Positions 3 to 44,661 of a DNA stretch of 64,000 nucleotides are shown here, piece by piece. Every line of letters begins with the position of its first letter. Within the stretch, counting starts at the first letter, position 1. Made by a program: the position numbers and the translations under genes. The stretch is from the IMG/VR virus record IMGVR_UViG_3300017917_001996, positions 186,290-250,289 of that record. One strand, given 5' to 3'. A model generated the notes under the pieces. It ran no database searches, was not told the origin of the DNA, and saw only the letters and a list, made by a program, of their open reading frames with translations.

Positions 3-1145
3 TCGAATTTTACCGTTCCTACTGCACCACTAACAGCAATTGAAAATACAAGTTTGTTGACCTGCCAAAATACTACAATAGTAGATAACAGTACCAATAA
101 TTATACTATTACAAAAACAGGTTCTCCGTCTGTAAGTAGTCTAAGTCCTTTTGCAGTAGAGCCCGGTACGGTTCAATTGACAACCAATGGACGAACTCTT
201 GATTTCCCTATCACTTTCGGTGAATTAACTAACGGATCAGGTGTAGTAAAATTAGATGGTGCGTTAACATTAGGAAGTACCAGATCTGTTACTCATACTA
301 TTGGTACCTTAGATTTAAATGATTTTACTTTAACTGCATTAACGTATGTTTCTAATATTGGCAACAACAGATCTATTAATTTTAGATCAACGGGTCTAAT
401 TGTGTTGTCTGGTAGCGCCGCAACAGTATGGGACACATCTACAGGTACAGGTTTCTCCTGGTCGGGTAACTTTCAAGTTAATTCAACATACGCCGGATCC
501 ACTGGAACTAGAACATTTAACTTTGGAAATATCTCCGAAACATATGCACCTAATGTTAAGGTTAGCACAGGAGCAGGCGTGTTTAGTTTAGGTACTGCTG
601 CTGATGTAAAAGTAGTTACAGGATCTATAAATGACTTTGACCTAACTAGTTTTGCTGGTAACTTAAACAACAGCACAAGAACTATTTACGGTAATTTAAC
701 TATACCATCAACTGGGGGAAATATAATTGCTGGTACTTCGACAACCACATTTGGTTCAACTTCAGGTGTAGTTAAAACTGTTAACACCAATGCTAGAACA
801 ACGGATTTTCCGTATACCTTTGACGGAGTTGGTGGTAACTGGCAGCTGACAAATAATTTAGTAACTAGCGCAAGTCGTATAGTAACACTAACCAATGGTA
901 CTGTTGATTTTAATCAGAAATCAGTAACCGCTGCTAACATTAGAGTATTAACTGGAAATGCTGCACTAACCAATTTATCAACGACATTAAATATTGTACA
1001 CACCAGTGGAAATTTAACAATCAATTCAGGAACCATCAATAGCGCAACAACTGGTACATATACATTAACAGCAGGTAATTTAATTTTGAGCGGACCTTTA
1101 AGCACTGGAGCATTTACCAATAACGGTGGGGGAATTTTGTTATGA
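3..1145 (+). CDS. Thr/Gly-rich repetitive virion fibre protein, 5'-truncated
   Basis: Frame open from base 3 (SNFTVPTAPLTAIENTSLLTCQ, the end of a LamG-type module); TTNGRTLDFP repeats shared with the next ORF. Confidence 0.75.
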   Translation, partial: SNFTVPTAPLTAIENTSLLTCQNTTIVDNSTNNYTITKTGSPSVSSLSPFAVEPGTVQLTTNGRTLDFPITFGELTNGSGVVKLDGALTLGSTRSVTHTIGTLDLNDFTLTALTYVSNIGNNRSINFRSTGLIVLSGSAATVWDTSTGTGFSWSGNFQVNSTYAGSTGTRTFNFGNISETYAPNVKVSTGAGVFSLGTAADVKVVTGSINDFDLTSFAGNLNNSTRTIYGNLTIPSTGGNIIAGTSTTTFGSTSGVVKTVNTNARTTDFPYTFDGVGGNWQLTNNLVTSASRIVTLTNGTVDFNQKSVTAANIRVLTGNAALTNLSTTLNIVHTSGNLTINSGTINSATTGTYTLTAGNLILSGPLSTGAFTNNGGGILL

Positions 1146-5269: not shown

Positions 5270-5298
5270 TTGACAAAACTAAAACTAGGCTATATAAT
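5270..5298 (+). promoter_or_regulatory. Sigma70-type promoter, leaderless to ATG 5304
   Basis: TTGACA-17 nt-TATAAT, ATG 5 nt downstream, no SD. Confidence 0.8.
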
Positions 5299-5303
5299 AG
5301 CGT

Positions 5304-8300
5304 ATGAAAATTGCTATTATAGATATAATTGGGCTTCCGTATGATGGTACAACGGTACACAATCAAGGACTAGGCGGAAGTGAAAGCGCAGTAACATTCA
5401 TGGCCGAGCAGCTGGCTCGGTTGAATTTTGATGTAACTGTTTTTAATAACTGCAACATTGATCACGCCCGTCCTGGGGTATATTCGGGTGTACTGTATAG
5501 ACCACTTGAAGATCTAACTCAAGATCACGAGTTTGATATTGTTATTAGCAGCCGAACTATAATTCCATTTGTTGACCCACACAGGTATCACGAACTTAAC
5601 GACAATCGTGCATTTGCACTGCAACACTATAATCTCTATGACCGTGTAGTCTCCCGAGCACAAATGAGAATTCTTTGGATGCATGACACCTTTTGTCTAG
5701 GTGATAACATGATCGAAGAGTTGGCTGTCAGCAATCGGATTACCGATATCTTTACACTAAGTGACTTTCATCTAACCTATGTGGCTAACTGCCATCACGG
5801 ACGCCGCAGAAATTTTGAAGTACTTAAACCAAAGTTGTTTATTACTAGAAACGGTGCTAACTGTTATCACAAAGAAATCGATCTAAAGAAAAAAGACCCA
5901 AATCTCTTTGTCTATAATGCCAGTGTGACCAAAGGAATGATACCCTTGGTTAATGAAGTTTGGCCAAGATTAAAAGCACAAATACCCGAAGCTCGGTTAA
6001 AGGTAATCGGTGGTTATTACAGATTTAGCGAAAGCTCGGGACCCGATCAGCAAGAACAAGATTGGCGACGAATGGTTGCTGATTCAAGGTATGCTGAGTT
6101 GGATATTGAGTTCACCGGAGTTATTCCACAAAAAGCAATCGGTGACATCTTAGCAGAATCTAATTTTATGATATACCCAACGGCGTTTCCTGAAACGTTT
6201 GGAATATCAACATTAGAATCATTACTTTACAATACTCCAGCAATTACTTGTAGATTCGGTGCTCTTGAAGAAATTGCAGTCGAAGGTGCTTGTTACCTAA
6301 TAGACTATGCCGTTGAACCTAACAGTTTATTTCCTGATATCAATCGAGTTGAGCAAGTACAAAAATTTGTAGACCTGGCTGTACGTGCTTATCGTGATCC
6401 ATATCTACATCAACAAAAACAACAATACTGTAACGTGGTCAAAGACATCGCTGGTTGGGATAGTGTAGCTCTACAGTGGAAGCAGCATTTCTATAAGAAA
6501 GCTGGAGAGTATTTGTCGCGAGACGAATATCGTGCTGTGAGCAAAATCAATCACAAAGTGCACAAAATTTGGAATCGTCGATACACTAACCCTATAGAGT
6601 TTGAACACTACAAGCCGGGTAATGAACAACCCATTGTGGTTGTGAGTACATTCTATAACTGTGCCAACTACATTGCACGTTGCATCAAAAGTGTAGCCTC
6701 TCAAGATTACGATAATTACAGTGTCTACCTGGTTAATGATGCCAGCACAGACAACACGCTAGAAGTAATCAACCAAACATTATCCACATTGCCTGTGGAT
6801 ATTAGATCAAAGTTTAAAACAATCAATCGTGATACAAATGTTGGTGCAGTAAAAAATCAAGTTGAAGTATTTAGAAGTATTCGAGATCCTGAATCAATTG
6901 TTATGATTCTAGATGGCGACGACAGTTTAATAAACAACAATTCCATTTTTAGCTACTACAATTCTATCTATGATGGAACAACAGAGTTTACCTATGGTAG
7001 CTGTTGGAGTATGGTTGACCGCATACCTTTGATCAGCCAACCTTATCCAGAACACATCAAACAGTCTCGAGCATATAGAGAGCATAGGTTTAATTGGAAT
7101 ATGCCTTACACGCATCTTCGCACATTTAAACAATATTTGATTAACAATATTAACAATTCGGTATTCAAGGATCAAGATGGTAATTGGTTCCGTGCTGGCG
7201 GCGATGGTGCTACTTTTTATAACTTAATTGAAGCAGCTGATCCAGATAAGGTTAAATGCTTACAGGAAGTTGTCTATAACTACAACGACACTAATCCACT
7301 GAATGATTACAAGATAAATGGTCACGAACAAAATAAAACTGCCGATGCTATTCTAAATCAAAAGAAAACAGAAAGCAAATTGTATTCGGTGATTGTTCCT
7401 ACAATGTGGAAGACTGCTAAAACATTTGCAGGCTTTGCCAAATCTTTGTGTGCACACCCGTTAGTGGGCGAATTAATCATTATTAATAATCAAAGTGAGT
7501 TGACCCCTGAAGGACTCAACAATCCTAAAATTAGAATGATCGATCCGGGCAGAAATATCTATGTTAATCCTGCCTGGAACCTAGGAGTAAAAACAAGCAG
7601 ATACGATCGTTTGTGTATTGTCAATGACGATGTTATATTTGATCTGACTGTACTAGAACGATTAAAAGATAGGCTAACACCCGAATCAGGAGTATTTGGA
7701 CTTTGTCCTGGTGTAGCCGATTTTAACCAACCTCCGGTTATTAACGGTAATATCGATATTATTCCATGGTCTGGCCAACACACCTACGGCTTTGGTTGCT
7801 TGATGTTTATACACAAAAAGTCTTGGCGAGAGATTCCTGCAGGATTAGAAATTTACTATGGCGACAACTTTATCTTTGACTTGCAGCTACATGAAAAGAA
7901 AACTAACTATCTAATAACCAACATGTTGTTCAAGTCCCAGTTTGCAGCCACGACATCAGACAAATCTATTACTGCTGGATTCTTAGAAAAAGAAACACCG
8001 ATTTACGAACAAATAAAAAGCCAAGGATTTACAACTAAAAAACAAGAGATAGCACCTGCTATAAACAAAACCGCAATGCCTAAAAAAAGAATTTTAATTG
8101 CTATCCCTACTGCACGTAACATAGAAGCAGAAACATTTAAAAGCATATATGATTTAGAAATACCCGAAGGGTATACTGCCACGTTCCAATACTTCTATGG
8201 TTACAACGTTGATCAAGTTAGAAATCTGATTGCTGATTGGGTAGTTAGAGGATTTGATTATTTGTTTAGTGTAGACAGTGATATTGCATTTCCGCCAGAC

Positions 8301-9362
8301 ACTTTGAAGAAGTTATTAGCACACGATAAAGACATGGTTTCTGGTTTGTATATTCAGCGCAAGCCCGGGCAGCATATCTTAGAAGTCTATGAGCATAATG
8401 GTCGAGGTGGTTCGAGTAACATACCCTATGAGAAAATTGTTGGACGAGGATTAGTAGAAATTGCCGGCTGCGGCTTTGGTTGTGTGCTAGTTAAAGCCGA
8501 AGTAATGCGAGCCATTCCTTACCCGCATTTTGTTTATCATAGTGCAATCGACCATAAAGACACTATCAGCGAAGATGTTGATTTTTGCCGTAAAGTGTTA
8601 GCTAAAAACTTTAAGATCTGGGCTGACACAACAGTGCAGTGCCGACATATTGGTTCAGCCGAGTTTGTTATTAACAACAACATTAAGCCAGTATCTGCCG
8701 AATCGAGACTTAGAGAATTACACAGTCAACGACTATTGCCACAAGCACATGTTGAATACTTGCAAAGACTAGCAGCATTGGGATTAAATCCTCCTGTGAT
8801 ATATGATCTCGGTGCTTGTGTGTTACATTGGACCAACGAAGCTCGTAGAATATGGCCCAATGCAAAGTACTATGCATTCGAAGCCATGAGCAGTTGCGAG
8901 TTCTTATACAAAGAAGATGGTATCGAGTACGCTATGGGTTTGCTCAGCGATGTCGATGGCAAAGAATTAGACTTTTATCAAAATGAAGAACATCCCGGCG
9001 GTAACAGTTATTATCGAGAAAACTCAGAGGTGAATCCGCAGGCTCCTATGTATTTTAATGAATCTCATCGACGTCGTTTAATTAGTCGTAGTCTAGACAG
9101 CCTGGTAAAAGAAAAAGGTTTTGCTATGCCTGCCTTATTAAAAATGGACATACAAGGTGCTGAACTAGATGTACTACGCGGCTCTACACAGGTACTTCAG
9201 TCCGTGACTGATGTTATCTTAGAGTTGCAAGTTGTTGAATACAATAAAGGTGCACCACTTCGAGATACCGTATTAGCATATATGGACAGTATCGGTTTTG
9301 ACTGTATAGGTATGTTCTGTAATAACGGTCCAGACGGGGACTATCATTTCAGAAAAAGATGA
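5304..9362 (+). CDS. Multidomain glycosyltransferase (GT4 + 3x GT2-like) fused to an FkbM-type methyltransferase
   Basis: GGSE...ETFGISTLE (GT-B); VNDASTD/LDGDD, IVNDD, VDSD (GT-A DxD); YDLGAC...LKMDIQGAELDVL (FkbM). Confidence 0.85.
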   Translation: MKIAIIDIIGLPYDGTTVHNQGLGGSESAVTFMAEQLARLNFDVTVFNNCNIDHARPGVYSGVLYRPLEDLTQDHEFDIVISSRTIIPFVDPHRYHELNDNRAFALQHYNLYDRVVSRAQMRILWMHDTFCLGDNMIEELAVSNRITDIFTLSDFHLTYVANCHHGRRRNFEVLKPKLFITRNGANCYHKEIDLKKKDPNLFVYNASVTKGMIPLVNEVWPRLKAQIPEARLKVIGGYYRFSESSGPDQQEQDWRRMVADSRYAELDIEFTGVIPQKAIGDILAESNFMIYPTAFPETFGISTLESLLYNTPAITCRFGALEEIAVEGACYLIDYAVEPNSLFPDINRVEQVQKFVDLAVRAYRDPYLHQQKQQYCNVVKDIAGWDSVALQWKQHFYKKAGEYLSRDEYRAVSKINHKVHKIWNRRYTNPIEFEHYKPGNEQPIVVVSTFYNCANYIARCIKSVASQDYDNYSVYLVNDASTDNTLEVINQTLSTLPVDIRSKFKTINRDTNVGAVKNQVEVFRSIRDPESIVMILDGDDSLINNNSIFSYYNSIYDGTTEFTYGSCWSMVDRIPLISQPYPEHIKQSRAYREHRFNWNMPYTHLRTFKQYLINNINNSVFKDQDGNWFRAGGDGATFYNLIEAADPDKVKCLQEVVYNYNDTNPLNDYKINGHEQNKTADAILNQKKTESKLYSVIVPTMWKTAKTFAGFAKSLCAHPLVGELIIINNQSELTPEGLNNPKIRMIDPGRNIYVNPAWNLGVKTSRYDRLCIVNDDVIFDLTVLERLKDRLTPESGVFGLCPGVADFNQPPVINGNIDIIPWSGQHTYGFGCLMFIHKKSWREIPAGLEIYYGDNFIFDLQLHEKKTNYLITNMLFKSQFAATTSDKSITAGFLEKETPIYEQIKSQGFTTKKQEIAPAINKTAMPKKRILIAIPTARNIEAETFKSIYDLEIPEGYTATFQYFYGYNVDQVRNLIADWVVRGFDYLFSVDSDIAFPPDTLKKLLAHDKDMVSGLYIQRKPGQHILEVYEHNGRGGSSNIPYEKIVGRGLVEIAGCGFGCVLVKAEVMRAIPYPHFVYHSAIDHKDTISEDVDFCRKVLAKNFKIWADTTVQCRHIGSAEFVINNNIKPVSAESRLRELHSQRLLPQAHVEYLQRLAALGLNPPVIYDLGACVLHWTNEARRIWPNAKYYAFEAMSSCEFLYKEDGIEYAMGLLSDVDGKELDFYQNEEHPGGNSYYRENSEVNPQAPMYFNESHRRRLISRSLDSLVKEKGFAMPALLKMDIQGAELDVLRGSTQVLQSVTDVILELQVVEYNKGAPLRDTVLAYMDSIGFDCIGMFCNNGPDGDYHFRKR

Positions 9363-9364
9363 AA

Positions 9365-9390
9365 CTAAATATCTAATACTAGATATTTAG
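9365..9390 (+). promoter_or_regulatory. Perfect 11-bp hairpin containing a late promoter TAAATA
   Basis: CTAAATATCTA-ATAC-TAGATATTTAG, ending 4 nt before ATG 9395. Confidence 0.65.
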
Positions 9391-9394
9391 AAAT

Positions 9395-10324
9395 ATGACA
9401 TTTGACCTAGGCGTTATACAAAGACAACAAAAACGTATTCCCTACGGTGAAGCGGTGTTTACAACTCCAGGTACATTTACCTGGACTGCACCCTTTTATG
9501 TTGATAGAGTTTGTGTAGTCTGCATTGGCGGCGGCGGTGGGGGCCAAGCTAGAAAAGATTCAACTCCAAATCATCTTCGTGGTGGTGCAGGCGGCGGTCT
9601 CGGCTGGCGCAATCAAATTCCGGTAGTACCAGGACAAACCTATACTGTAGTAGTTGGTGGCGGTGCACCGGGCGGCGCAACTTCCGCTGCTATGACAGAT
9701 AATGTTTACCCAACTAGCAATGGTGGAGATAGTTATTTTATTGATACTAACACTGTAAAAGGTGGCGGTGGCGCCAGTGCATCACCAGACGTATTTTATG
9801 CTCCAGGCGGCGACTACATTGGTGACGGCGGTGGCCTTGGTGGCGCAGGCGCCGGAGGTTTTGGGTTTTCTGGTTTAGGAAGCACAGGTGGCGGTGGCGG
9901 CGCTGGTGGCTATCTCGGTGCAGGCGGAAATGCCGGAGGCTCTTTACAAGGGATGGATCCACAGCCAGGTCAAGGAGGTGCAGGAGGCGGCGGCGGTTCT
10001 CTCGATGATGGAGTAAATCCTAATCACGGCACAGGCGCCGGCGGCGGCGGTACTGGTATATATGGCATAGGTGAAAGCGGTATAGCAGGCACAAATTCGG
10101 CTACTACGCCTACCGGTGGTTTAGGTGGTAGCAACGGCACCAATGGTATACGGCATAGCACTGTGTTTGTCGGCGGACGTGGAGGCGGACAGTACGGCGG
10201 CGGCGGTGCAGCCACTGGTTTTGATCCTATACCAATGGTAATTAAAGGTGCCGATGGCGGTTCGGGTGCAGTTAGAATAATATGGGGAACCAGCCGAAAC
10301 TTCCCTGATGCCAATGTTGGTTAA
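9395..10324 (+). CDS. Glycine-rich virion protein
   Basis: FTTPGTFTWTAP...VCIGGGGGG...GAVRIIW, a common phage Gly-rich domain. Confidence 0.7.
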   Translation: MTFDLGVIQRQQKRIPYGEAVFTTPGTFTWTAPFYVDRVCVVCIGGGGGGQARKDSTPNHLRGGAGGGLGWRNQIPVVPGQTYTVVVGGGAPGGATSAAMTDNVYPTSNGGDSYFIDTNTVKGGGGASASPDVFYAPGGDYIGDGGGLGGAGAGGFGFSGLGSTGGGGGAGGYLGAGGNAGGSLQGMDPQPGQGGAGGGGGSLDDGVNPNHGTGAGGGGTGIYGIGESGIAGTNSATTPTGGLGGSNGTNGIRHSTVFVGGRGGGQYGGGGAATGFDPIPMVIKGADGGSGAVRIIWGTSRNFPDANVG

Positions 10325-10331
10325 TTGAGAC

Positions 10332-10360
10332 TTGATCTTTTGATTGGCATTTGCTATAGT
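10332..10360 (+). promoter_or_regulatory. Sigma70-type promoter, leaderless to ATG 10368
   Basis: TTGATC-17-TATAGT with extended TG; ATG 7 nt downstream. Confidence 0.65.
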
Positions 10361-10367
10361 AGCAAAT

Positions 10368-10769
10368 ATGAAAAAAGTGTTTGTTAACGGCTCCTTTGAT
10401 TTATTACATCCTGGGCACATTAAGTTATTAAATACTGCTCGTAGTCTAGGTGACTATCTAATGGTAGCCATAGACTCTGATCGACGAATAGCCGAAAAGA
10501 AAGGTCCAGACCGTCCTGTTAACAATCAATTTACTAGATACGTTTTGATGAGCAACATCAAAGCAGTTGATCAAGTTGTTGTTTTTGACAGCGACAGTGA
10601 ATTAGAAGATATTATTAAAAATTTTCAACCAGACATTATGATGGTAGGCAGCGACTGGCGAGGACGTACAGTAATTGGATCGCAGTATGCAGGCCATTTA
10701 GAGTTTTTCGAAAGACAAGATGATTATTCAACTACCAGTATACTCCAAAATTATATTAATCGGAGATAA
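10368..10769 (+). CDS. rfaE2: Heptose-1-phosphate nucleotidyltransferase (HldE/RfaE domain II-like)
   Basis: NGSFDLLHPGH HIGH motif, KKGPDRP, YSTT; start moved to MKKVFVNG. Confidence 0.85.
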   Translation: MKKVFVNGSFDLLHPGHIKLLNTARSLGDYLMVAIDSDRRIAEKKGPDRPVNNQFTRYVLMSNIKAVDQVVVFDSDSELEDIIKNFQPDIMMVGSDWRGRTVIGSQYAGHLEFFERQDDYSTTSILQNYINRR

Positions 10770-11478
10770 CTGCATCGATCAATACCAATACGGCACTGTA
10801 GATCGTATTAGCCCTGAAGCTCCTGTTCCGGTGTTTAAGCCTGAATCAGAAGAATCTCGCCCTGGTATGGCTGCAAATGTTCAAAAAAACCTTGAAGCAC
10901 TAGGACTAACAGTGGATGCATATTTAGGTCCGGCAAGCACTAAAACAAGATTGATAGATACCAGGAGTCAACAGCATATTGTTAGAATTGATAACGATGT
11001 ACTGGCAGACCCAATTGATATATCAGGAATTGATTTCAAACACGCTCAGGCTGTGGTAATATCTGATTACAACAAAGGTTCAGTTACATACGACATGGTT
11101 GAACAAATTGTAGACCAATTTAAAGGACCTATTTTTGTTGATTCTAAAAAACACGAATTGGCAAGATTCGATGGATGCATTGTTAAGATAAATGAAAATG
11201 AATACCGTTCTAGAAATAGTATCAATGACAACTTAATTGTTACATTAGGTGCATATGGTGCTATGTGGAAACAGTACAACAATGAAGAATTCTTTGATGC
11301 AGAAAATGTAGAGATAGCTGATGTATGTGGAGCAGGTGACACCTTCCTTGCAGCTCTAGTTTATCAATATCTGAAATCAAAAAATATACCTGATGCGATT
11401 CGATTTGCTATCCGTGCCAGCGCAGTTACAGTACAACATATAGGAGTATATGCTCCTAGACTAGAGGAAATTAAATGA
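10720..11478 (+). CDS. rfaE1: Heptose-7-phosphate kinase (HldE/RfaE domain I-like, PfkB family)
   Basis: RISPEAPVPV, ISDYNKG, DVCGAGDTF. Confidence 0.88.
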   Translation: MIIQLPVYSKIILIGDNCIDQYQYGTVDRISPEAPVPVFKPESEESRPGMAANVQKNLEALGLTVDAYLGPASTKTRLIDTRSQQHIVRIDNDVLADPIDISGIDFKHAQAVVISDYNKGSVTYDMVEQIVDQFKGPIFVDSKKHELARFDGCIVKINENEYRSRNSINDNLIVTLGAYGAMWKQYNNEEFFDAENVEIADVCGAGDTFLAALVYQYLKSKNIPDAIRFAIRASAVTVQHIGVYAPRLEEIK

Positions 11479-11834
11479 CAAGACTAATGGGTCGAGTAGA
11501 AAAAGGTTGGGGTTCTGAAGAAATTTGGGCCACTAACGACAAGTATTGTGGCAAGCTAATGCACTTCAACACAGGTGCAAAATTCAGTATGCACTTCCAT
11601 GCTACAAAGGATGAAACTTGGTATGTTCTCAGTGGGCAGTTTAGTGTATTCTATATTGATACTAAAGATGCTACTTTACACGAAGCACAATTAAGTACTG
11701 GTGACACTTGGCACAATGCTCCGTTATTACCTCACCAGTTAGTATGCGTAGAAGCAGGTACAATTATTGAAGTCAGTACTCCGGACTCAGTTGAGGATAA
11801 TTATAGAGTAGCAAAAGGTGATAGTCAAAAATGA
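11475..11834 (+). CDS. Cupin protein (sugar-phosphate isomerase-like)
   Basis: KGWGSEEIW...SMHFH...KDETWYV...PHQL cupin motifs. Confidence 0.75.
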   Translation: MTRLMGRVEKGWGSEEIWATNDKYCGKLMHFNTGAKFSMHFHATKDETWYVLSGQFSVFYIDTKDATLHEAQLSTGDTWHNAPLLPHQLVCVEAGTIIEVSTPDSVEDNYRVAKGDSQK

Positions 11835-12142
11835 AATATATTGTAGACATTGATGGTACTATCTGTACCAACACTAAAGGTGATTATCAAAGTGCAGAAC
11901 CTTTTATGGACAGGATTTCATACTTCAATAATCTGTTTGACCAAGGGCACGAAATACATTATTGGACTGCTCGTGGGGGCAATTCGGGTATCGATTGGAC
12001 CACACTAACACAACAGCAATTTGCCAATTGGCAGGTGAAATACACTACATTGAAGTTGGGTAAGCCTGTTTATGATGTATGGATTGATGACAAGGCTTTT
12101 AACGGTGACACCTACTTTGAGGATGTTAAGCGTTACAGTTAA
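11831..12142 (+). CDS. Small HAD-family phosphatase
   Basis: DIDGT, WTARG, GKP...IDDKA. Confidence 0.8.
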   Translation: MKYIVDIDGTICTNTKGDYQSAEPFMDRISYFNNLFDQGHEIHYWTARGGNSGIDWTTLTQQQFANWQVKYTTLKLGKPVYDVWIDDKAFNGDTYFEDVKRYS

Positions 12143-12548
12143 CTTCGGCTACTTTAATTTTAGCCATAATAGTTTCTGAGTTAAAAGTTCTATTAACGCC
12201 AGGGTGTGTAGGTTTCGGAATAGAGGTCAATGGCACCCAAGCATAACCTACGTGTTCATTGTTTAACACAGGAACAAACTCGTACTCAACAGCAATAAAA
12301 AACGTATGGTAAACAAACTGTTCGTTGTTGCTGGTAAACATCTCAATGGGTACCATTTTAGGTGCAATGATAGTACCACCTAGTTCTTCTAGGATTTCTC
12401 TTTCTAGTCCCTGTGAAACAGTTTCGCCAGGGTTTATCTTTCCGCCTGGTAAACCCCATGTTGCTGACCAACTTCCTGACCCTCGTAACAAGAAAAGATA
12501 ACGCTGAGTATCTTTAGCATAAATCAGTGCGCCAACACCTTCGGTCAA
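12126..12548 (-). CDS. NUDIX hydrolase
   Basis: Nudix box GGKINPGETVSQGLEREILEELG; probable TTG start at 12548 overlapping the upstream stop, with GGAG SD. Confidence 0.85.
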   Translation of the reverse strand: MTEGVGALIYAKDTQRYLFLLRGSGSWSATWGLPGGKINPGETVSQGLEREILEELGGTIIAPKMVPIEMFTSNNEQFVYHTFFIAVEYEFVPVLNNEHVGYAWVPLTSIPKPTHPGVNRTFNSETIMAKIKVAEVNCNA

Positions 12549-13927
12549 GGCACGAAACTCCACGCCCCTGCGCCGTAACGTCCTTCCACTGATTTGGTCC
12601 ATTGATTGTCTTTCCATTTGTATTGAGTATTAGTTCTAAGGTTGGTTACGTATTTTACATTAGTTGAGGCATTACTGTCAAAGGAAACAGTCCACTTAGC
12701 ACCATCAAATTCAATAATATCATTGGTTTGAGCAATTAACTCAGGTTGACCTGGCTTGTGCCAAACGGCTGCGCCTTCGTCGTTGGCTGCATTGCCAATG
12801 TCATTGAGTATCAAATACCTTGTTCCAGCAGCTGGTGTAAGTAAATCAGAATCTACTTTAACGTTTAAAGGATCAATGATTGCAGTGACAGGAGCAAGGT
12901 TATTAGCCGGAAGAGTGTCAATGATAGGTGTAAACAATAATAATGTAGCATCGCTTGGATGATATGCTACAGTACCGACTACAGTGGTTCCTGCTTGACT
13001 TAGTCTGATTTGACTGATGCCGTTGGTTAATGTTCCGTAATCTCTAATAATATCGACCCATTTTATATCATTAGTAGTAAATGAAGTAGCACCTGGTATA
13101 AAATCACTGGTGTAATCTGATGTAGAAATTTTCAATGTGTTGCCTATATACAGAACACCATAATTCGAAGGTGTGTAGATTCGTCTAGACAGTAACGTTG
13201 ATTGACTTAGATCAAATGTACCAGCAGCATGGTCGATGGTATTATTTGAATCCCATATGCTTTCAATGATACGCTGTATGACGCCCATCTTTTTAACTTT
13301 AGCAGGTGCACTAAACCAAATTGGAATATCAAATGTTAATGTGGCTATGTCAATGGCGTCTTCGGCACCCATTGGAATTGTGCGGCTAGTAAAGTTAGTA
13401 TCGGTTAATGTAACGTAGGTTAAGCTGGTCCAGTCTACATAGTTGTCTGTGCTTTGTATTTCTAAACTTGGATTGAACAAAACTGAAATTTGTTCTAGTA
13501 ACTGTAACTTTTGCTCAGTATTACTGGTCCAGATATCGCATTTTAACGTCAGCATATATGGAACAGGCATTAATCTTTCAACTGTAATTAAGTCTCCCTG
13601 TTCGCTTGTAAACTCGCCTGCTTCATTAATAGCACGTTCACGAAGATGTACCTTGCTGACATGGAATGGTTCTTGCATTCTTTTTTGGTCATAGCGTAAT
13701 GCACTAATGTACACACTCATAGCAGGCACAGTTGGTGTACTGTTTTCGCTATTGTTGCGTAGAATCATAGCTACCTGGCGGCTGCCGTCACCGTAATATA
13801 TAGGTACCTGAAGTAGTGTAGGATTTCCTTGGTCATTGTATCCAATGGCCACTTGGAAATTACTCATCATCCTTATAAACTGCTGTAAGAATCTTCTTAT
13901 CTGCCCTGAGTAAAAATATGAATTCAT
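12545..13927 (-). CDS. Tail sheath stabiliser/terminator (T4 gp15-like)
   Basis: YFYSGQIRR...VPIYYG...PVPY...QLLEQI..FNP pattern; next to neck genes. Confidence 0.7.
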   Translation of the reverse strand: MNSYFYSGQIRRFLQQFIRMMSNFQVAIGYNDQGNPTLLQVPIYYGDGSRQVAMILRNNSENSTPTVPAMSVYISALRYDQKRMQEPFHVSKVHLRERAINEAGEFTSEQGDLITVERLMPVPYMLTLKCDIWTSNTEQKLQLLEQISVLFNPSLEIQSTDNYVDWTSLTYVTLTDTNFTSRTIPMGAEDAIDIATLTFDIPIWFSAPAKVKKMGVIQRIIESIWDSNNTIDHAAGTFDLSQSTLLSRRIYTPSNYGVLYIGNTLKISTSDYTSDFIPGATSFTTNDIKWVDIIRDYGTLTNGISQIRLSQAGTTVVGTVAYHPSDATLLLFTPIIDTLPANNLAPVTAIIDPLNVKVDSDLLTPAAGTRYLILNDIGNAANDEGAAVWHKPGQPELIAQTNDIIEFDGAKWTVSFDSNASTNVKYVTNLRTNTQYKWKDNQWTKSVEGRYGAGAWSFVP

Positions 13928-40435: not shown

Positions 40436-41197
40436 ATGAATCCTTATATTAACGAACAAGACTGGAATAAGCTGCACGAACAATTTCAAACAGCACAGCC
40501 TTTTAGGCATGTCGTCATTGATAATTTTTTTAAACCTGAAGTTGCACAACAGTTATTTGACGAATTTCCAAACTATAATAGTGATGTTTGGAATGCACAT
40601 TACAATAATCCGGTAGAAAACAAAAAGGCCTGCGATCATTGGACTAAATTTCCTCCGATGACCTATAGGGTCTTTAATTTTTTTTGCGGGCGTGAGTTTA
40701 CGCACACTGTAGAACAGATCACAGGGCATCCTGAAGTGCTTCCTGATATTGGTCTACACGGCGGCGGCTGGCATGCTCATGCTAAAAGTGGCAAGTTAAA
40801 CATACACTTAGATTACAGTATTCATCCTAAACTCAAACTAGAGCGCCACTATAATCTAATTGTATATCTTACTCCAAATTGGAATTCCAGTTGGGGTGGC
40901 GGCCTTGAGTTTTGGTCACACAATCATGAAACTAATCAGCCCTTGCAGTGTGTTACTACAGTTGAGAATAAGTTTAATCGTGCTGTGATTTTTGATACAA
41001 CACAAAATTCATGGCACGGCTTACCCGAGGATTTAATTTGCCCTGATGATCAAATACGACGTAGCCTAGCTATGTATTATGTAACAAATCCTGAGACCAA
41101 TGCCCCTGACCGCCTAAGAGCCAAATTTGCTCCGTATCGAGAGCAGAATCAAGACCAAGAAATTTTAGACTTTATTGAAAAGAGACAAAAACTATGA
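40436..41197 (+). CDS. 2OG-Fe(II) oxygenase (prolyl-hydroxylase-like)
   Basis: HLD...WHG...RRSLA; PFRHVVIDNF. Confidence 0.88.
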   Translation: MNPYINEQDWNKLHEQFQTAQPFRHVVIDNFFKPEVAQQLFDEFPNYNSDVWNAHYNNPVENKKACDHWTKFPPMTYRVFNFFCGREFTHTVEQITGHPEVLPDIGLHGGGWHAHAKSGKLNIHLDYSIHPKLKLERHYNLIVYLTPNWNSSWGGGLEFWSHNHETNQPLQCVTTVENKFNRAVIFDTTQNSWHGLPEDLICPDDQIRRSLAMYYVTNPETNAPDRLRAKFAPYREQNQDQEILDFIEKRQKL

Positions 41198-41814
41198 ACG
41201 AAACTAGTAAAGCATTAATCCGTAGGCTTAACGACTCTCGTTATGCTAGTACATATTTCCGAGGTAACGGAATTGATATTGGTGCAGGGGACGATTCCCT
41301 TGGGCGTTATCAACAACAGTTTCCTTTGATTGAATCGGTTCGTGCTTGGGATATTCCCGATGGTGATGCCCAGTTAATGGAAAGTGTTGTAGATAATACT
41401 TACGATTTTGTACACAGCAGTCATTGTCTTGAACATTTAAATAATCCTTTTGAAGCATTTAAAAACTGGATTAGAATTTGTCGTCCCGGCGGACATATTA
41501 TTACTACAATACCCGACGAAGATCTTTATGAACAAGGTGTGTTTCCTAGCACATTTAATAATGATCATAAGAGTTCATGGACCATTCTTAAAGGTAAGAG
41601 TTGGAGCCCTGTAAGCGTTAATGTTATTGAACTTCTTTATCAATTCCGTAACGAGATTGAAATCTTAAAGATTGAATTAGTTAATGGTAGTTTTAACTAC
41701 AACCAGCCGCGCTACGATCAAACTCTTTATGGAATTAGCGAATGCGCCATTGAATTCATTGTTAGAAAGCGCCCACAGTCAGAAATTGATCGTCTAGGAA
41801 GACTACCCGAATGA
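41194..41814 (+). CDS. Class I SAM-dependent methyltransferase
   Basis: IDIGAG, YDFVHSSHCLEH, RICRPGG. Confidence 0.88.
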   Translation: MNETSKALIRRLNDSRYASTYFRGNGIDIGAGDDSLGRYQQQFPLIESVRAWDIPDGDAQLMESVVDNTYDFVHSSHCLEHLNNPFEAFKNWIRICRPGGHIITTIPDEDLYEQGVFPSTFNNDHKSSWTILKGKSWSPVSVNVIELLYQFRNEIEILKIELVNGSFNYNQPRYDQTLYGISECAIEFIVRKRPQSEIDRLGRLPE

Positions 41815-42641
41815 AAGACATCACTATTGTAGCCGTTGACACTTATGCACACGATCTGACTCGTTGTGCTATAGAACGTACTCTAGAAGAAATACCTTGT
41901 CGAGAAGTTCTAGTATTCAGCGACAAAAACATTTTTCCTGATGGTCGCTGGATCGATATTAATCCTATTGACATAGTTGGTTATAATACTTTGATGGTTA
42001 AACATTTATGGCCTTTTATTCGTACCGAACATGTACTAATTGTTCAGTACGACGGACTGGCTGTGAATTCCAATAATTGGACTGATGACTTTTTAAACTA
42101 TGATTATATCGGCGCAATCTGGCCCTGGGATCACCACCCTCCTGAATATAAGGTGGGCAACGGCGGATTTAGTCTGCGTAGTCGAAAATTGATTGAAGCC
42201 TGTAAGAATCATGACATGGCATTAACTAACAAGCTGCCCATGTACGAAGATTTGTATATCTGTGTGCACTACAAGAAGTACTTAGAAAGCCAGGGTATCC
42301 GTTATGCCGACATAAGTACAGCTAAAAAGTTTAGTCATGAGCACCATCCTGGTTACCAAGATACTTTCGGGTTTCACGGCACATTTAATGTTCCGTACTA
42401 CTTAGACGATCAGTATTGTGAAAAGTTTATTGAACTGTTACCAGGGTGGACTAGCGAGGGCGTTCTTTTAATGGTAGCACATTGTTTCCAGGCAGGGAAA
42501 TTTGAATTAGGTAAACTTGCACTAGAACAAGGTCGCCGAAAAACAGATAACTTTGATTCTCGTGTTAGACAGATTTTAACACAACATTCTAGCCAGTTTA
42601 ACGGCGAAGATTTTCAAACAATTTATCGACACTTAAAATGA
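41811..42641 (+). CDS. DUF5672-like putative glycosyltransferase
   Basis: LIVQYDG, YDYIGAIW, VGNGGFSLRS, FGFHG. Confidence 0.8.
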   Translation: MKDITIVAVDTYAHDLTRCAIERTLEEIPCREVLVFSDKNIFPDGRWIDINPIDIVGYNTLMVKHLWPFIRTEHVLIVQYDGLAVNSNNWTDDFLNYDYIGAIWPWDHHPPEYKVGNGGFSLRSRKLIEACKNHDMALTNKLPMYEDLYICVHYKKYLESQGIRYADISTAKKFSHEHHPGYQDTFGFHGTFNVPYYLDDQYCEKFIELLPGWTSEGVLLMVAHCFQAGKFELGKLALEQGRRKTDNFDSRVRQILTQHSSQFNGEDFQTIYRHLK

Positions 42642-43525
42642 CAAGAACAAGTATATTAGTTAATAGACAAGGTGCAAGCGGCGATGTACTAATGACATCG
42701 CCTATTGTTCGTAAGTTGCATCAAGACTACCAAGGTAACTGCGACATTGATTTTTCTGTATGGCATGAATGTGCTCCGATGATCGAAAAGAATCCTTACA
42801 TTAGGAAAGTTCTTCACACAAAACCTACAGAAGATTTAATTGCACAGTATGATCGTTATATTGACTTAGATCTAGTCTACGAACGTAACCCAGAAATTCA
42901 TGCTGTTGATGCTTATGCACTACACGCCTTTGGTACTACAGACTTTGATCGAAGTTTAGAATTGCACACCGACAGCGCCGATCAAGAAGTTGGCAACAAG
43001 TTCCAAGAGATTCTCGGAGGCAATTACATTGTGTTACATCAGCGTCGTTGGGCATGGCCAAGTAGAAACATTGACCCTGACATGTGGGCACAAGTAGTTA
43101 AACAAATACTTGAAAATACTTCGGTATATATTGTACAGGTTGGTCAGGCACACGAACCTTGTTTTACTGATCATCCGAGATTAATCGATGCTCGGGGACA
43201 ATTTACTGTACACGAACTCAAAGAAGTTATTGGCAAAAGCAAATTATTCATGGGTGTCGACTCTGCACCCGGGCACATTGCGGCTGCAACCGAAACTGAT
43301 ATGTTGCTATTGTTCACCAGTGTGCGCGAAGAATATCGCAGACCCCTGCGTTCGAAAGGGCAATTTGTTCCTATCATTCCCGACATTGATTGCTACGGTT
43401 GTCATGCCAAGAACCCTGCACCGTGTACAACATTTATTTGTCACCGTGGTGATGTGGACTGCGTAAATAAGTTTAACTCGGAAGACATTGCACAACGAGC
43501 AATTGAATTAATAAACGCACAATGA
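42638..43525 (+). CDS. GT9 (heptosyltransferase-family) glycosyltransferase
   Basis: [26 protein letters not shown]-terminal Cys cluster. Confidence 0.85.
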
Positions 43526-44661
43526 GATTCCATATTCTAGGATTACCTCACACGGTAACAAACAAAGCATACAATGCCTGTGCATACACACAGAAGGTTT
43601 GGAAATTTGGTAAAATGATGAAAGCTCGAGGGCACGAGATTATTCATTACGGGCACCCTGACAGTGACGTTATCTGCGACGAACATGTTAATGTTATTAG
43701 CAACCAAGATTTAGAAATTGCCTATGGTAATTACGATTGGCGTCGGAACTTTTTTAAGTTTGATGTTAACGACCATGCTTACCAGACATTCTATAAAAAT
43801 GCTATTCGTGAAGTTGGCTTACGTAAAAAGAAACACGACTTTATCTTGCCGTTCTGGGGTTCCGGGCATAAACCAATCTGCGACGCACATCCTGACCTAA
43901 TTACTGTTGAGCCTGGTATTGGGTATGCCGGTGGACATTGGGCAAGGTTTAAGATATTCGAAAGTTATGCGATTTATCATGCATATTATGGTTTAGATGC
44001 AGTAGGTAGATGTAAACAGGACTGGTATGACGTTGTTATTCCTAATTATTTTGACCCTGATGATTTTGAATATGCACCTGAAAACAAAGAAGATTATTTC
44101 TTGTTTGTGGGTCGAGTATATGACGGTAAAGGTGTAAATGTTGCTATTCAAGCAACAGAAGCGATTGGCGCTCGATTAAAGATTGCCGGTCAAGGTAGTT
44201 TACAGGATATGGGATATCAAGAAATCCCCAAGCATGTAGAATTTATTGGTTATGCTGATATCGAAACTCGTCGACAGTTAATGAGTCGGGCACGAGCCGC
44301 ATTTGCACCTAGTATGTATGTAGAACCATTTGGCGGTGTGCAAATTGAAATGTTAATGTCAGGTACTCCTACAATCACCACAGATTGGGGTAGTTTCTCT
44401 GAAAATAATATTCATGGATTAACTGGTTATCGGTGCCGTACATTTGAACATTTTAAATGGGCTGCACAGAATATCGGTAATATCAAACCAGAAAACTGCC
44501 GTGCTTGGGCCATGGATAATTTTAGTTTAGATCGCGTGGCTAAAATGTATGAGGAGTATTTTCAGTCAGTATTAAATATATACACTGGAAAAGGTTGGTA
44601 TGAGTCAAATGATAATCGAAAAGATTTAGATTATCTAGGTAGATTTATTCCAAAAATGTAG
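43522..44661 (+). CDS. GT4 glycosyltransferase
   Basis: [18 protein letters not shown]...GTP. Confidence 0.88.

What the first reader, a model, noticed from the sequence alone, without database searches (positions are those of the whole stretch)
10368..12142. Phage nucleotide-heptose operon with cupin and mini-HAD where GmhA/GmhB would be expected
Seen: split HldE nucleotidyltransferase and kinase genes overlap with a cupin gene and a 103-aa HAD phosphatase gene; no SIS-fold GmhA or HldD in this window. Established: ADP-heptose synthesis needs an isomerase, kinase, phosphatase and nucleotidyltransferase. Inference: these four genes may form a complete non-canonical pathway, with the cupin as isomerase, feeding the GT9 at 42638.
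Basis: partly seen in the sequence, partly recalled or inferred. Interest (0 to 1): 0.62.

Follow-up and report, generated by a model that had tools for sequence, protein, structure and literature searches.

The report
Phage heptose-nucleotide operon with cupin isomerase
A pond jumbo phage carries a four-gene operon that probably makes a nucleotide-activated heptose sugar, with a small PMI-like cupin and a 103-residue HAD phosphatase standing where bacteria use GmhA and GmhB; the same module is widespread and mis-annotated in T4-like phages.

Summary
Window 10368-12142 holds four overlapping + strand genes:
- an HldE-domain-II-like nucleotidyltransferase;
- a shortened HldA/HldE-domain-I-like kinase;
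- a 119-aa metal-site cupin;
- a 103-aa capless HAD.

The whole 250-kb record (about 71% complete) has no SIS/GmhA, no GmhB-type HAD and no HldD.

The mini-HAD is a homologue of RB69 gp51/AfhF (PDB 9iqw). A paper reports that enzyme as a sugar-1,5-bisphosphate 5-phosphatase.

The cupin relates to type II phosphomannose isomerase cupin domains (hhalign 93%), not to RmlC epimerases (1.4%). It lies within 3 kb of the kinase in 54 of 58 informative viral loci. None of the cassette-bearing records I scanned for GmhA has a SIS gene, six near-complete jumbo genomes and six complete cyanophage genomes among them.

In phage Bellamy the cupin and mini-HAD accompany HddA/HddC-type enzymes instead. So they go with both heptose routes, as GmhA and GmhB do in cells. 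Phages with a SIS isomerase (Cr30, RB69) lack the cupin.

The cupin as sedoheptulose-7-phosphate isomerase is well supported by comparison but not shown biochemically (confidence 0.6). This is a new variant of a known pathway.

The parts
10368..10769 (+). Heptose-1-phosphate nucleotidyltransferase-like gene (HldE domain II / HldC type). The ORF opens at TTG 10344, but ATG 10368 is the likelier start.
   Evidence: PF01467 61 bits. TIGR02199 rfaE_dom_II 119.8 bits is the best NCBIfam hit but lies under the 181.5 cut-off; TagD scores 69 bits. phrog_7878 2e-47. PDB HldC-like 5x9q 5.8e-17 over residues 11-134. The HxGH motif (HPGH) and the C-terminal YSTT can be read in the translation.
10720..11478 (+). 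Shortened heptose-7-phosphate kinase-like gene (HldA / HldE domain I type, PfkB fold, 252 aa). It overlaps the NT gene by 50 nt in another frame.
   Evidence: TIGR02198 140 bits is the best hit, under the 345 cut-off. The best solved relative is B. cenocepacia HldA 4e84 at 1.3e-18, against ribokinases at about 1e-8. The GAGDTF motif and the N-terminal GDxCxDxYxYG...R.SPEAPVP motif are conserved across 8 phage homologues. phrog_8133 9e-85.
11475..11834 (+). 119-aa single-domain metal-site cupin of the type II phosphomannose-isomerase kind. Proposed sedoheptulose-7-phosphate isomerase, an analogue of GmhA.
   Evidence: Cupin_2 32 bits; PF01050 24.1 bits against a cut-off of 23.6, over residues 7-97. 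hhalign to the E. coli CpsB C-terminal cupin gives probability 93.4%, against 1.4% for RmlC. H40, H42, E47, H87, S38, K27, K45 and R111 are nearly invariant in 73 relatives. AF2 model pLDDT 95.5. Context evidence.
11831..12142 (+). 103-aa capless HAD phosphatase of the AfhF / 1xpj kind. Proposed heptose-1,7-bisphosphate 7-phosphatase, an analogue of GmhB.
   Evidence: PDB 9iqw 5.6e-11 and 1xpj 2.8e-4. 37.5% identity to RB69p051 (gp51), E 5e-9. gp51 is analogous to AfhF, which PMC13326640 reports as an Mg-dependent Araf-1,5-bisphosphate phosphatase. D6, D8, T46, K78 and D87 are invariant in 9 homologues. In close relatives a non-homologous NT5C-type HAD stands in the same operon slot.
42638..43525 (+). 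GT9-like glycosyltransferase, a candidate heptosyltransferase. It is the only GT9 in the record and is a possible consumer of the product.
   Evidence: PF01075 31.7 bits against a cut-off of 22, with partial coverage. TIGR02201 heptosyltransferase III 70 bits, under its cut-off. It is the only hit in G000.
40436..44661 (+). Second glycan-modification cluster around the GT9: 2OG-Fe(II) oxygenase, SAM methyltransferase, DUF5672, GT9-like and GT4.
   Evidence: Pfam scan.
5304..9362 (+). 1352-aa fusion of a GT4 domain, GT2 domains and an FkbM methyltransferase, two genes upstream on the same strand. Probably part of the same glycosylation unit.
   Evidence: Pfam scan. In relative L002 the same place holds a separate 1123-aa GT and a 232-aa FkbM methyltransferase directly upstream of the NT gene.
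9395..10324 (+). Glycine-rich protein (Gly_rich_2) between the giant GT and the cassette. It is fibre-like and is a candidate glycosylation target. That role is inference only.
   Evidence: PF21722 48 bits. phrog_4474 and phrog_863 'tail fiber assembly'.

Best explanation
[quoted passage not shown] Because the record has no HldD, the product would not be epimerised at C6.

Proposed steps:
1. The PMI-like cupin isomerises sedoheptulose-7-P to heptose-7-P. This is the seven-carbon counterpart of fructose-6-P to mannose-6-P. It would be metal-dependent, through H40, H42, E47 and H87. This step is inferred.
2. The shortened HldA-like PfkB kinase phosphorylates O1. This is inferred from homology.
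3. The AfhF-like mini-HAD removes the 7-phosphate from the 1,7-bisphosphate. This is inferred from homology to a phage sugar-1,5-bisphosphate 5-phosphatase reported as characterised.
4. The HldC/HldE-II-like transferase adds the nucleotide. This is inferred from homology.

The activated heptose would then be used by phage glycosyltransferases. Candidates are the GT9-like gene at 42638 and possibly the giant GT upstream. The acceptor is unknown; it may be virion fibre-like proteins or host surface glycans.

The cupin and mini-HAD are non-orthologous replacements of GmhA and GmhB. The module is widespread in T4-like aquatic phages.
For: Heptose identity:
- The kinase's best solved relative is HldA (1.3e-18).
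- The best NCBIfam hits for kinase and NT are rfaE domains I and II.
- 48 of 58 informative related loci have an SDR matching the cassette-SDR profile within 3 kb.
  - All six short SDRs (252-290 aa) that I scanned score TIGR02197 189-237 bits, against GalE 35-73 bits.
  - The two 324-326-aa SDRs are GalE.
- A GT9-like gene is present here and in relatives.

Phosphatase:
- The mini-HAD is homologous to RB69 gp51/AfhF and to PDB 9iqw, with intact HAD motifs.
- A different HAD (NT5C type) occupies the same slot in close relatives.

Cupin as isomerase:
1. It belongs with type II PMI cupins.
   - PF01050 scores at the cut-off.
   - 27 of 73 relatives hit PF01050 and 24 of 73 hit D-lyxose isomerase.
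   - hhalign to the CpsB cupin gives 93.4%. S38, H40, H42, K45, E47 and H87 align to the PMI Ser, Gln, His, Arg, Glu and His.
   - There is no detectable relation to RmlC.
2. It lies within 3 kb of the kinase in 54 of 58 informative viral loci. It is elsewhere in the record in 2 of the 4 exceptions.
3. Natural fusions exist: mini-HAD+cupin, NT5C-HAD+cupin and NT+cupin.
4. No SIS was found in any scanned record that carries the cassette.
   - That covers G000, 50 kinase-bearing viral records (6 of them at least 90% complete) and 6 complete cyanophage genomes.
   - The same search finds GmhA in Cr30, which lacks the cupin. RB69 (SIS isomerase plus AfhF) also lacks it.
5. In phage Bellamy the cupin sits between an HddA-like kinase (279 bits) and an HddC-like NT, with the mini-HAD upstream.
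   - So the cupin and mini-HAD go with both heptose routes.
   - This matches what GmhA and GmhB do in cells, which is established knowledge of the ADP- and GDP-heptose pathways.
6. Marine Synechococcus hosts of cupin-bearing cyanophages have LPS without heptose (PMC4515613).
Against: - No enzymology exists for any member of the cupin family.
- Fold comparison does not discriminate. The best VIA match is the CapF cupin domain (Z 15.8), followed by a flat list at Z 12-14 that includes PMI and lyxose isomerases. From my own knowledge, not tested here, the CapF cupin domain is a C3-epimerase acting on a UDP-4-keto sugar.
- Only 15 of 58 related cassettes carry any recognisable phosphatase. These phages therefore do lean on host enzymes for at least one step, and could equally lean on a host GmhA.
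- The cupin is often next to the HldD-like SDR, which also fits a tailoring role.
- The record is about 71% complete and the host is unknown.
- I could not check whether the hosts encode gmhA.
- The kinase and NT score far below the HldE equivalog cut-offs, so substrate and nucleotide are not certain.
Confidence: 0.6

Rival explanations
1. The cassette makes nucleotide-heptose but takes heptose-7-phosphate from the host's GmhA. The cupin would then be a tailoring enzyme, such as a CapF-like or other epimerase or ketoisomerase, acting on the nucleotide-heptose or on a keto intermediate. That would change the sugar's configuration.
For: The best structural match is the CapF cupin domain (Z 15.8). 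There is a weak hit to the WbuC cupin family (26.8 bits, under its cut-off). The cupin is often adjacent to the HldD-like SDR. In Bellamy it lies beside Gmd-like and RmlD-like SDRs. Most related cassettes lack a phosphatase, so they do depend on host enzymes.
Against: - In this record the only SDR is a GalE 126 kb away, so nothing here would make or reduce a keto sugar.
- 8 informative loci have the cupin without a nearby SDR.
- G008, 92% complete, has no HldD-like SDR.
- The fusions found are with HAD and NT domains. In a BLASTP of the representatives of 160 aa or more against cassette SDRs, none matched an SDR.
- There is no detectable similarity to RmlC-type epimerases.
- Sequence-family hits are to aldose-ketose isomerases.
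- Cyanophage hosts have LPS without heptose.
Confidence: 0.17
2. The cupin is a true phosphomannose isomerase. The operon would make a nucleotide-mannose by the bisphosphate route: fructose-6-P, mannose-6-P, mannose-1,6-bisP, mannose-1-P, NDP-mannose. The cupin might instead accept both six- and seven-carbon substrates.
For: PF01050 and the hhalign match to a GMP/PMI cupin. Small single-domain cupin PMIs exist, for example T. kodakarensis 7zvy, with Foldseek TM-score by target 0.80 and VIA Z 13.8. The kinase is shortened and scores far below the HldE cut-off. Cyanophage cupins have been read as MPI in the literature (PMC9602691).
Against: - Most relatives have an HldD-like epimerase beside the cassette. 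From established knowledge, HldD acts at C6 of a heptose, a centre that mannose lacks.
- Bellamy has an HddA-like kinase.
- The kinase's nearest solved relative is HldA.
- GT9-like transferases are linked to the cassette.
Confidence: 0.13
3. The same enzymes work in another order. The cupin makes heptose-7-P, the HAD removes the 7-phosphate to give free heptose, and the kinase then acts as an anomeric kinase on the free sugar before nucleotidyl transfer. No bisphosphate intermediate would form.
For: HAD-cupin fusions of two independent kinds suggest consecutive steps. The kinase lacks about 50-60 residues relative to HldA. D-lyxose/D-mannose isomerase-type cupins, which 24 of 73 relatives hit, act on unphosphorylated sugars (the substrate point is my own knowledge).
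Against: The homologous AfhF is reported to act on the 1,5-bisphosphate, after the kinase step (PMC13326640). S38, which aligns to the PMI phosphate-binding Ser, and several conserved basic residues fit a phosphorylated substrate.
Confidence: 0.07

Closest known systems
Bacterial ADP-L-glycero-beta-D-manno-heptose pathway (GmhA, HldE or HldA+HldC, GmhB, HldD)
   Same: It follows the same four-step logic and has homologous kinase and nucleotidyltransferase. An HldD-like epimerase is present in most related phage cassettes. A GT9-like transferase is in the genome.
   Different: - The isomerase slot holds a cupin, not a SIS protein.
- The phosphatase is an AfhF/1xpj-type 103-aa HAD, not a GmhB-type HAD.
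- Kinase and NT are separate, shortened, overlapping genes in reversed order.
- There is no HldD in this record.
Phage NDP-arabinose pathway for arabinosyl-5-hydroxycytosine DNA (RB69 gp55, gp52:53 and gp51; HY126 AfhE/AfhF; PMC13326640)
   Same: It is the same viral scheme: isomerase, then 1-kinase, then mini-HAD bisphosphate phosphatase, then nucleotidyltransferase. The mini-HAD here is a homologue of gp51/AfhF, with 37.5% identity.
   Different: There the isomerase is a SIS arabinose-5-P isomerase, and the kinase/NT is a MurU-like plus APH-like fusion. The sugar is a pentose and the acceptor is DNA. RB69 has no cupin of this family.
Cyanophage 'LPS/heptose' gene clusters (P-SSM2 PSSM2_309-313, S-CAM1 SXBG_00216-00220, S-SSM7; T4-GC 304-308)
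   Same: The same NT, kinase, mini-HAD and cupin families are present at 33-49% identity, plus an HldD-like SDR. These clusters have been known as sequence since 2005.
   Different: - The gene order is NT, kinase, HAD, cupin.
- Records annotate the HAD as 'phosphoheptose isomerase' and the cupin as 'cysteine dioxygenase' or 'nucleotidyltransferase'. The missing GmhA therefore went unnoticed.
- The present phage is a freshwater jumbo relative without the SDR.
Type II phosphomannose isomerase cupin domain (AlgA/WbpW/PslB/CpsB C-terminal domain; single-domain T. kodakarensis PMI, PDB 7zvy)
   Same: It has the same fold and metal-site motif, and the Ser, [Gln/His], His, [Arg/Lys] and Glu residues align. 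The chemistry is the same, ketose-phosphate to manno-aldose-phosphate.
   Different: - The first metal ligand is His, not Gln, and Lys replaces the catalytic Arg.
- Identity is only about 24%.
- The family is almost wholly viral.
- It is linked to heptose genes, not to a GMP domain.
GDP-D-glycero-alpha-D-manno-heptose pathway (GmhA, HddA, GmhB, HddC); Caulobacter phage Cr30 cluster
   Same: Phage Bellamy combines HddA- and HddC-like genes with this cupin and mini-HAD. Cr30 combines an HddA-like kinase with a true SIS GmhA.
   Different: The window's own kinase and NT are of the HldE type. Cr30 shows the canonical isomerase in a phage and has no cupin.
Viral NDP-heptose biosynthetic enzymes of Tang et al. 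2024 (commentaries PMC11573728, PMC11461863)
   Same: That work recognises HldE-type nucleotidyltransferases and kinases in viruses, and notes that viruses seem to lack the phosphatase.
   Different: As the commentary describes it, the survey intersected HENase homologues with homologues of the three other canonical enzyme types. Cassettes with a cupin and an AfhF-like HAD would therefore not be recognised as complete. The NT here has Tyr, not Arg, at the STTR5 position (translation).

Membership tests
HldE domain II / HldC heptose-1-phosphate nucleotidyltransferase (TIGR02199) | Cytidylyltransferase-like fold with the HxGH motif | tested here: met
   PF01467 61 bits. 'HPGH' can be read in the translation.
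HldE domain II / HldC heptose-1-phosphate nucleotidyltransferase (TIGR02199) | Scores over the curated equivalog cut-off | tested here: not met
   119.8 bits against a cut-off of 181.5. It is still the best family, ahead of TagD at 69 bits.
HldE domain II / HldC heptose-1-phosphate nucleotidyltransferase (TIGR02199) | C-terminal xSTT motif; Arg at position 5 (STTR5) marks NTP promiscuity | tested here: inconclusive
   STT is present (…DDYSTT…), with Tyr rather than Arg before it (the motif is described in PMC11573728). This suggests a non-promiscuous enzyme, but the nucleotide was not tested.
HldA / HldE domain I heptose-7-phosphate kinase (TIGR02198) | PfkB fold with the GAGD catalytic motif and the N-terminal GDxxxDxYxxG…RxSPEAPVP motif | tested here: met
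   Both motifs are conserved in 8 phage homologues. Residues 8-62 align to HldA 4e84 residues 53-107.
HldA / HldE domain I heptose-7-phosphate kinase (TIGR02198) | Full-length match over the equivalog cut-off | tested here: not met
   140 bits against a cut-off of 345, in three stretches. The protein is 252 aa against a 315-position model, with two internal deletions relative to 4e84.
GmhA (SIS-fold sedoheptulose-7-phosphate isomerase) | SIS fold (PF13580) | tested here: not met
   The candidate isomerase is a cupin. There is no SIS anywhere in G000. It is therefore not a GmhA family member; the claim is only that it works like GmhA.
Type II phosphomannose isomerase cupin (PF01050) | Profile match at or over the gathering score, covering the domain | tested here: met
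   24.1 bits against 23.6, residues 7-97 on profile positions 11-105 of 116. The margin is small. hhalign to the CpsB cupin gives probability 93.4%, E 2.4e-7. 27 of 73 relatives hit PF01050.
Type II phosphomannose isomerase cupin (PF01050) | Metal ligands and the Ser…Gln…His…Arg motif | tested here: met
   S38, H40 (for Gln), H42, K45 (for Arg), E47 and H87 are aligned and nearly invariant. Two substitutions are conservative, not identical.
Type II phosphomannose isomerase cupin (PF01050) | Aldose-ketose isomerase activity on a sugar phosphate | not testable with these tools
   This needs an enzyme assay.
GmhB (HAD subfamily, TIGR01656/TIGR00213) | Match to GmhB / histidinol-phosphatase-type HAD models | tested here: not met
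   The mini-HAD hits only TIGR01689 (24 bits) and NF046079. TIGR01656 finds nothing in G000.
AfhF / 1xpj-type capless mini-HAD (phrog_1238; PDB 9iqw) | Sequence homology to characterised or solved members | tested here: met
   9iqw 5.6e-11 and 1xpj 2.8e-4. RB69p051 37.5% identity over 94% of the length, E 5e-9. phrog_1238 1.9e-25.
AfhF / 1xpj-type capless mini-HAD (phrog_1238; PDB 9iqw) | HAD catalytic motifs I-IV | tested here: met
   D6, D8, T46, K78 and D87 are invariant in 9 homologues.
AfhF / 1xpj-type capless mini-HAD (phrog_1238; PDB 9iqw) | Acts on a sugar 1,omega-bisphosphate within a kinase/NT operon | tested here: inconclusive
   The operon context is met. The substrate is not testable here.
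GT9 heptosyltransferase | PF01075 over the gathering score | tested here: met
   31.7-32.6 bits against a cut-off of 22, but only about 55-100 profile positions are covered. The best NCBIfam is heptosyltransferase III at 70 bits, under its cut-off of 170.
RmlC-type NDP-sugar epimerase cupin | Detectable homology to dTDP-4-dehydrorhamnose 3,5-epimerase | tested here: not met
   hhalign probability 1.4%. There is no PF00908 hit.

The most novel reading that the evidence does not exclude
The 119-aa viral cupin is a previously unrecognised second class of sedoheptulose-7-phosphate isomerase, an analogue of GmhA derived from the type II PMI cupin. Together with the AfhF-like mini-HAD it would form a virus-specific 'isomerase plus phosphatase' pair. 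That pair would plug into either the HldE-type or the HddA/HddC-type activation enzymes. Thousands of aquatic T4-like phages, including major marine cyanophages, could then make activated heptoses even in hosts that have no heptose pathway. The likely use is to glycosylate their own virion fibres.
Probability: 0.5. Interest if true: 0.72.

Novelty: new variant of a known kind. Interest (0 to 1): 0.6.

Why it matters
- Nucleotide-heptose synthesis is a drug target and the source of ADP-heptose, an innate-immune agonist. As far as I know and could find, its isomerase step has been ascribed only to SIS-fold GmhA. A cupin doing that step would be a clean case of non-orthologous displacement and would add a new enzyme class.
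- It would correct two annotations that are spread through hundreds of phage records. phrog_1238, 'phosphoheptose isomerase', is a HAD phosphatase. phrog_7851, 'cysteine dioxygenase', is the likely isomerase.
- It would explain why surveys found viral heptose pathways incomplete.
- It would show that abundant aquatic and marine phages bring a complete heptose route into hosts whose own LPS lacks heptose. That raises a testable question: what do they heptosylate (virion proteins, the host surface or DNA)?
- The prediction can be tested directly with four small soluble proteins and E. coli gmhA, gmhB and hldE mutants.

Tried and rejected
1. DNA-level search for relatives in cultured phages found only a 104-nt stretch at 74% identity in two cyanophages. 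It was useless for context, so I moved to protein searches.
2. Function from fold did not discriminate. Foldseek and VIA both return generic metal cupins in a flat list: quercetinase, OxdC, CapF, KdgF, lyxose isomerase and PMI.
3. I reject the PHROG label 'cysteine dioxygenase' for the cupin.
   - No cysteine-dioxygenase family appears in the Pfam scans.
   - Only a low-ranked fold match to a putative CDO was found.
   - The genomic context is sugar activation.
4. I reject the label 'phosphoheptose isomerase' for phrog_1238. The protein is a HAD with a DxD motif, homologous to AfhF.
5. The RmlC-like epimerase idea fails at hhalign 1.4%.
6. I tried to get a picocyanobacterial genome handle, to ask whether cyanophage hosts encode gmhA.
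   - The single genome-contig scan, seeded with a cyanophage ferredoxin, returned only two MAG contigs.
   - The host test could therefore not be run. I fell back on the literature on heptose-free Synechococcus LPS.
7. Literature searches found nothing on a cupin-type sedoheptulose-7-P isomerase, on phage-encoded GmhA/HldE, or on PDB 9IQW.
No result exists, and I make no binding claim.
9. Read laying was not used. The only run that holds most of the stretch is a DNA run of a pond metagenome that may be the source sample.


Full report
**What is there**

The window is the last 64 kb of a 250,289-bp linear IMG/VR virus record. CheckV puts the record at about 71% complete. The only run that holds most of the stretch is from a pond metagenome and may be the sample it was assembled from.

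Neighbouring genes place it among T4-like myoviruses: tail-sheath stabiliser, sheath, gp13-like, UvsX-like and dNMP kinase. Its closest relatives are jumbo phages of 320-365 kb.

At 10344/10368-12142 four + strand ORFs overlap one another.
- NT and kinase overlap by 50 nt in different frames. Homology to the heptose enzymes runs into the overlap on both sides.
- Kinase/cupin and cupin/HAD each overlap by ATGA.

Upstream on the same strand lie a 1352-aa GT4+GT2+FkbM-methyltransferase fusion and a glycine-rich protein.

**Identity of the four proteins**

Nucleotidyltransferase:
- It is a cytidylyltransferase-fold protein. Its best family is rfaE domain II (120 bits, against TagD at 69 bits), though under the equivalog cut-off.
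- It aligns over residues 11-134 with the 'putative cytidylyltransferase' 5x9q (5.8e-17). I take 5x9q to be the Burkholderia heptose transferase HldC.
- It carries HPGH and a C-terminal YSTT.

Kinase:
- It is a 252-aa PfkB protein. Its best family is rfaE domain I.
- Its best solved relative by ten orders of magnitude is HldA of B. cenocepacia.
- It keeps the GAGD motif and the HldA-type N-terminal motif.
- It has two internal deletions relative to HldA.

Mini-HAD:
- It has no Pfam hit.
- It matches PDB 9iqw at 5.6e-11 and 1xpj at 2.8e-4.
- It is 37.5% identical to RB69p051.
- The aligned part of 9iqw reads the same as RB69 gp51.
- gp51 is the counterpart of HY126 AfhF. PMC13326640 reports AfhF as the Mg-dependent phosphatase that turns arabinofuranose-1,5-bisphosphate into the 1-phosphate.
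- Motif residues D6, D8, T46, K78 and D87 are invariant.

Cupin:
- It has the full cupin metal motif, H40-x-H42-x4-E47 … H87.
- It reaches Pfam's gathering score for the PMI C-terminal domain (24.1 against 23.6).
- It folds with pLDDT 95.5.

**Absence of the canonical enzymes**

In the whole record:
- PF13580 and PF01380 (SIS) find nothing.
- TIGR01656 finds nothing.
- The single SDR is a GalE, not HldD.

**The cassette is a widespread module**

- The cupin family has over 4,000 word-search hits. The top 120 are 75-88% identical to the query.
- It has 3,078 50%-cluster representatives at E up to 0.001.
- By the ESM Atlas it is almost wholly viral.
- A profile of the kinase finds more than 560 viral stretches.

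I scored the neighbourhoods of the best 80 loci. Of these, 58 have at least 2.5 kb on both sides of the kinase. Within 3 kb of the kinase in those 58:

| Neighbour | Loci |
|---|---|
| NT | 56 |
| Cupin | 54 |
| SDR matching the cassette-SDR profile | 48 |
| Any recognisable HAD | 15 |

Two of the four exceptions for the cupin carry it elsewhere in the record.

Of eight cassette-neighbour SDRs that I scanned, the six short ones (252-290 aa) are HldD-like: TIGR02197 189-237 bits against GalE 35-73 bits. The two of 324-326 aa are GalE.

In close relatives an unrelated NT5C-type HAD stands where the mini-HAD stands here. That marks the slot as a phosphatase step.

The same four families sit together in cultured cyanophages: P-SSM2, S-CAM1, S-CAM3, S-SSM7, P-TIM68, S-T4 and others. 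There the HAD is labelled 'phosphoheptose isomerase'. The cupin is labelled 'cysteine dioxygenase' or 'nucleotidyltransferase'. My comparisons show the so-called isomerase is the mini-HAD.

**Why the cupin is the likely isomerase**

1. Family.
   - 27 of 73 relatives hit PF01050, and 24 of 73 hit the D-lyxose/D-mannose isomerase family.
   - hhalign to the cupin domain of E. coli CpsB gives 93.4% probability. S38, H40, H42, K45, E47 and H87 fall on the PMI Ser, Gln, His, Arg, Glu and His.
   - RmlC gives 1.4%.
   - GmhA's reaction is the seven-carbon homologue of the PMI reaction. This is established chemistry.

2. Exclusivity.
   - No SIS was found in 50 kinase-bearing viral records, 6 of them at least 90% complete.
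   - None was found in six complete cyanophage genomes.
   - The same search does find GmhA in Caulobacter phage Cr30, which has a heptose cluster and no cupin.
   - RB69, with a SIS arabinose-5-P isomerase plus AfhE and AfhF, also has no cupin.

3. Modularity.
   - In Synechococcus phage Bellamy the cupin lies between an HddA-like kinase (NF049969, 279 bits, full length) and an HddC-like transferase.
   - The mini-HAD lies upstream, and Gmd-like and RmlD-like SDRs lie downstream.
   - The cupin and mini-HAD therefore travel with both non-homologous activation systems.
   - In cells, the two enzymes shared by the ADP- and GDP-heptose routes are exactly GmhA and GmhB.

4. Fusions. Mini-HAD+cupin occurs in three 50%-clusters. 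NT5C-HAD+cupin occurs on three contigs from at least two samples. NT+cupin occurs once.

5. Need. Marine Synechococcus LPS contains no heptose (PMC4515613). Their phages therefore cannot be assumed to find heptose-7-P in the host.

**What speaks against it**

- There is no biochemistry for any member.
- The fold search is flat. Its top hit is the CapF cupin domain, which as I recall is an epimerase domain.
- Three quarters of related cassettes lack a phosphatase, so reliance on host enzymes is real.
- The cupin often abuts the HldD-like SDR.
- The genome is incomplete, and the host and its gmhA status are unknown. My attempt to reach host genomes failed.

I therefore hold the isomerase assignment at about 0.6. 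The rivals are:
- a tailoring epimerase, 0.17;
- a true PMI feeding NDP-mannose, 0.13;
- a re-ordered pathway through free heptose, 0.07.

**Consumer**

- The GT9-like gene lies 30 kb downstream, in a second cluster with a 2OG oxygenase, a methyltransferase, DUF5672 and a GT4.
- GT9-like genes occur in 4 of 6 near-complete relatives, two of them over Pfam's cut-off.
- They lie two genes upstream of the cassette in P-SSM2 and S-CAM1, and about 2 kb upstream in G006.
- The link is plausible but circumstantial.
- The acceptor is unknown. The operon's place among fibre-like, glycine-rich structural genes suggests virion glycosylation. Sullivan et al. proposed host-surface change for P-SSM2.

**Novelty**

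- The genes have been in databases since 2005 and are described as 'heptose-related LPS genes'.
- Viral HldE-type enzymes were surveyed in 2024.
- I found no report that the isomerase is a cupin, or that the 'phosphoheptose isomerase' is really the phosphatase.
- This is a new variant of a known pathway, ready for a bench test.

- No alternative genetic code was used.
- The costly representative search was used once, on the cupin, because family scans left its function open.

Noticed in passing
window 5270-5298 (+): A perfect sigma-70 consensus, TTGACA-17-TATAAT (12 of 12), lies 6 nt upstream of the start of the 1352-aa glycosyltransferase gene. It could drive the whole 5304-12142 glycosylation unit from host RNA polymerase. 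The count of such sites in the region is not above chance, so this is a single-site observation only.
   Followed up: no
window 10720-10769; also L002 7246-7307, L003 7261-7319, L010 3925-4004, L011 3916-3956: The NT and kinase genes overlap by 41-80 nt in different frames in this phage and in distant relatives. S-SSM7 overlaps by only 14 nt. The order is reversed relative to HldE. Such a conserved long overlap might reflect translational coupling, or a frameshift that makes an NT-kinase fusion. This was not tested.
   Followed up: no
window 5304-9362 (+): A single 1352-aa protein combines a GT4 domain, two GT2 matches and a C-terminal FkbM methyltransferase. In relative L002 the methyltransferase is a separate gene.
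   Followed up: partly
window 12126-12617 (-): A NUDIX hydrolase gene converges on the mini-HAD gene and overlaps its 3' end by 17 nt. The same NUDIX neighbour is kept in relative L002. It might hydrolyse a nucleotide sugar, or it might be unrelated housekeeping.
   Followed up: no
PHROGs phrog_1238 and phrog_7851; RefSeq records such as RB69p051, PSSM2_311/312, SXBG_00218/00217: These are systematic mis-annotations. phrog_1238, 'phosphoheptose isomerase', is a DxD HAD phosphatase found in 389 phage records. phrog_7851, 'cysteine dioxygenase', is the PMI-like cupin. The wrong name has entered genome papers, for example PMC7378029.
   Followed up: yes
G000:C1:60195-62000 (outside the window; L012): A GalE (TIGR01179, 287 bits) lies next to a GTP cyclohydrolase I FolE (331 bits). 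In relatives L006-L009, FolE and a PTPS-like gene lie just downstream of the heptose cassette. That hints at a 7-deazaguanine or pterin pathway near the sugar genes.
   Followed up: no
L013/L107 (Synechococcus phage S-SM2, 148.4-163.3 kb): A large sugar island holds a transketolase-like gene and an alcohol dehydrogenase directly upstream of the HldE-like kinase. It also holds an HldD-like SDR, an HldE-like NT, a 522-aa NT fusion, a class II aldolase/epimerase, two mini-HADs, the cupin and four glycosyltransferases. That may be two activation routes, with a possible supply of sedoheptulose-7-P.
   Followed up: partly
L110 2217-3116, L111 613-1512: A 299-aa NT5C-HAD+cupin fusion stands alone between regA and the DNA polymerase gene of a T4-like phage, away from any kinase or NT in the 6 kb seen. 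In RB69 the arabinose genes also lie next to the DNA polymerase gene.
   Followed up: no
window 1142-5266 and 9395-10324 (+): Two glycine-rich-domain proteins (PF21722), one with a Laminin_G_3 lectin-like domain, flank the giant glycosyltransferase. They are probably fibre or decoration proteins, and they are candidate glycosylation targets.
   Followed up: no
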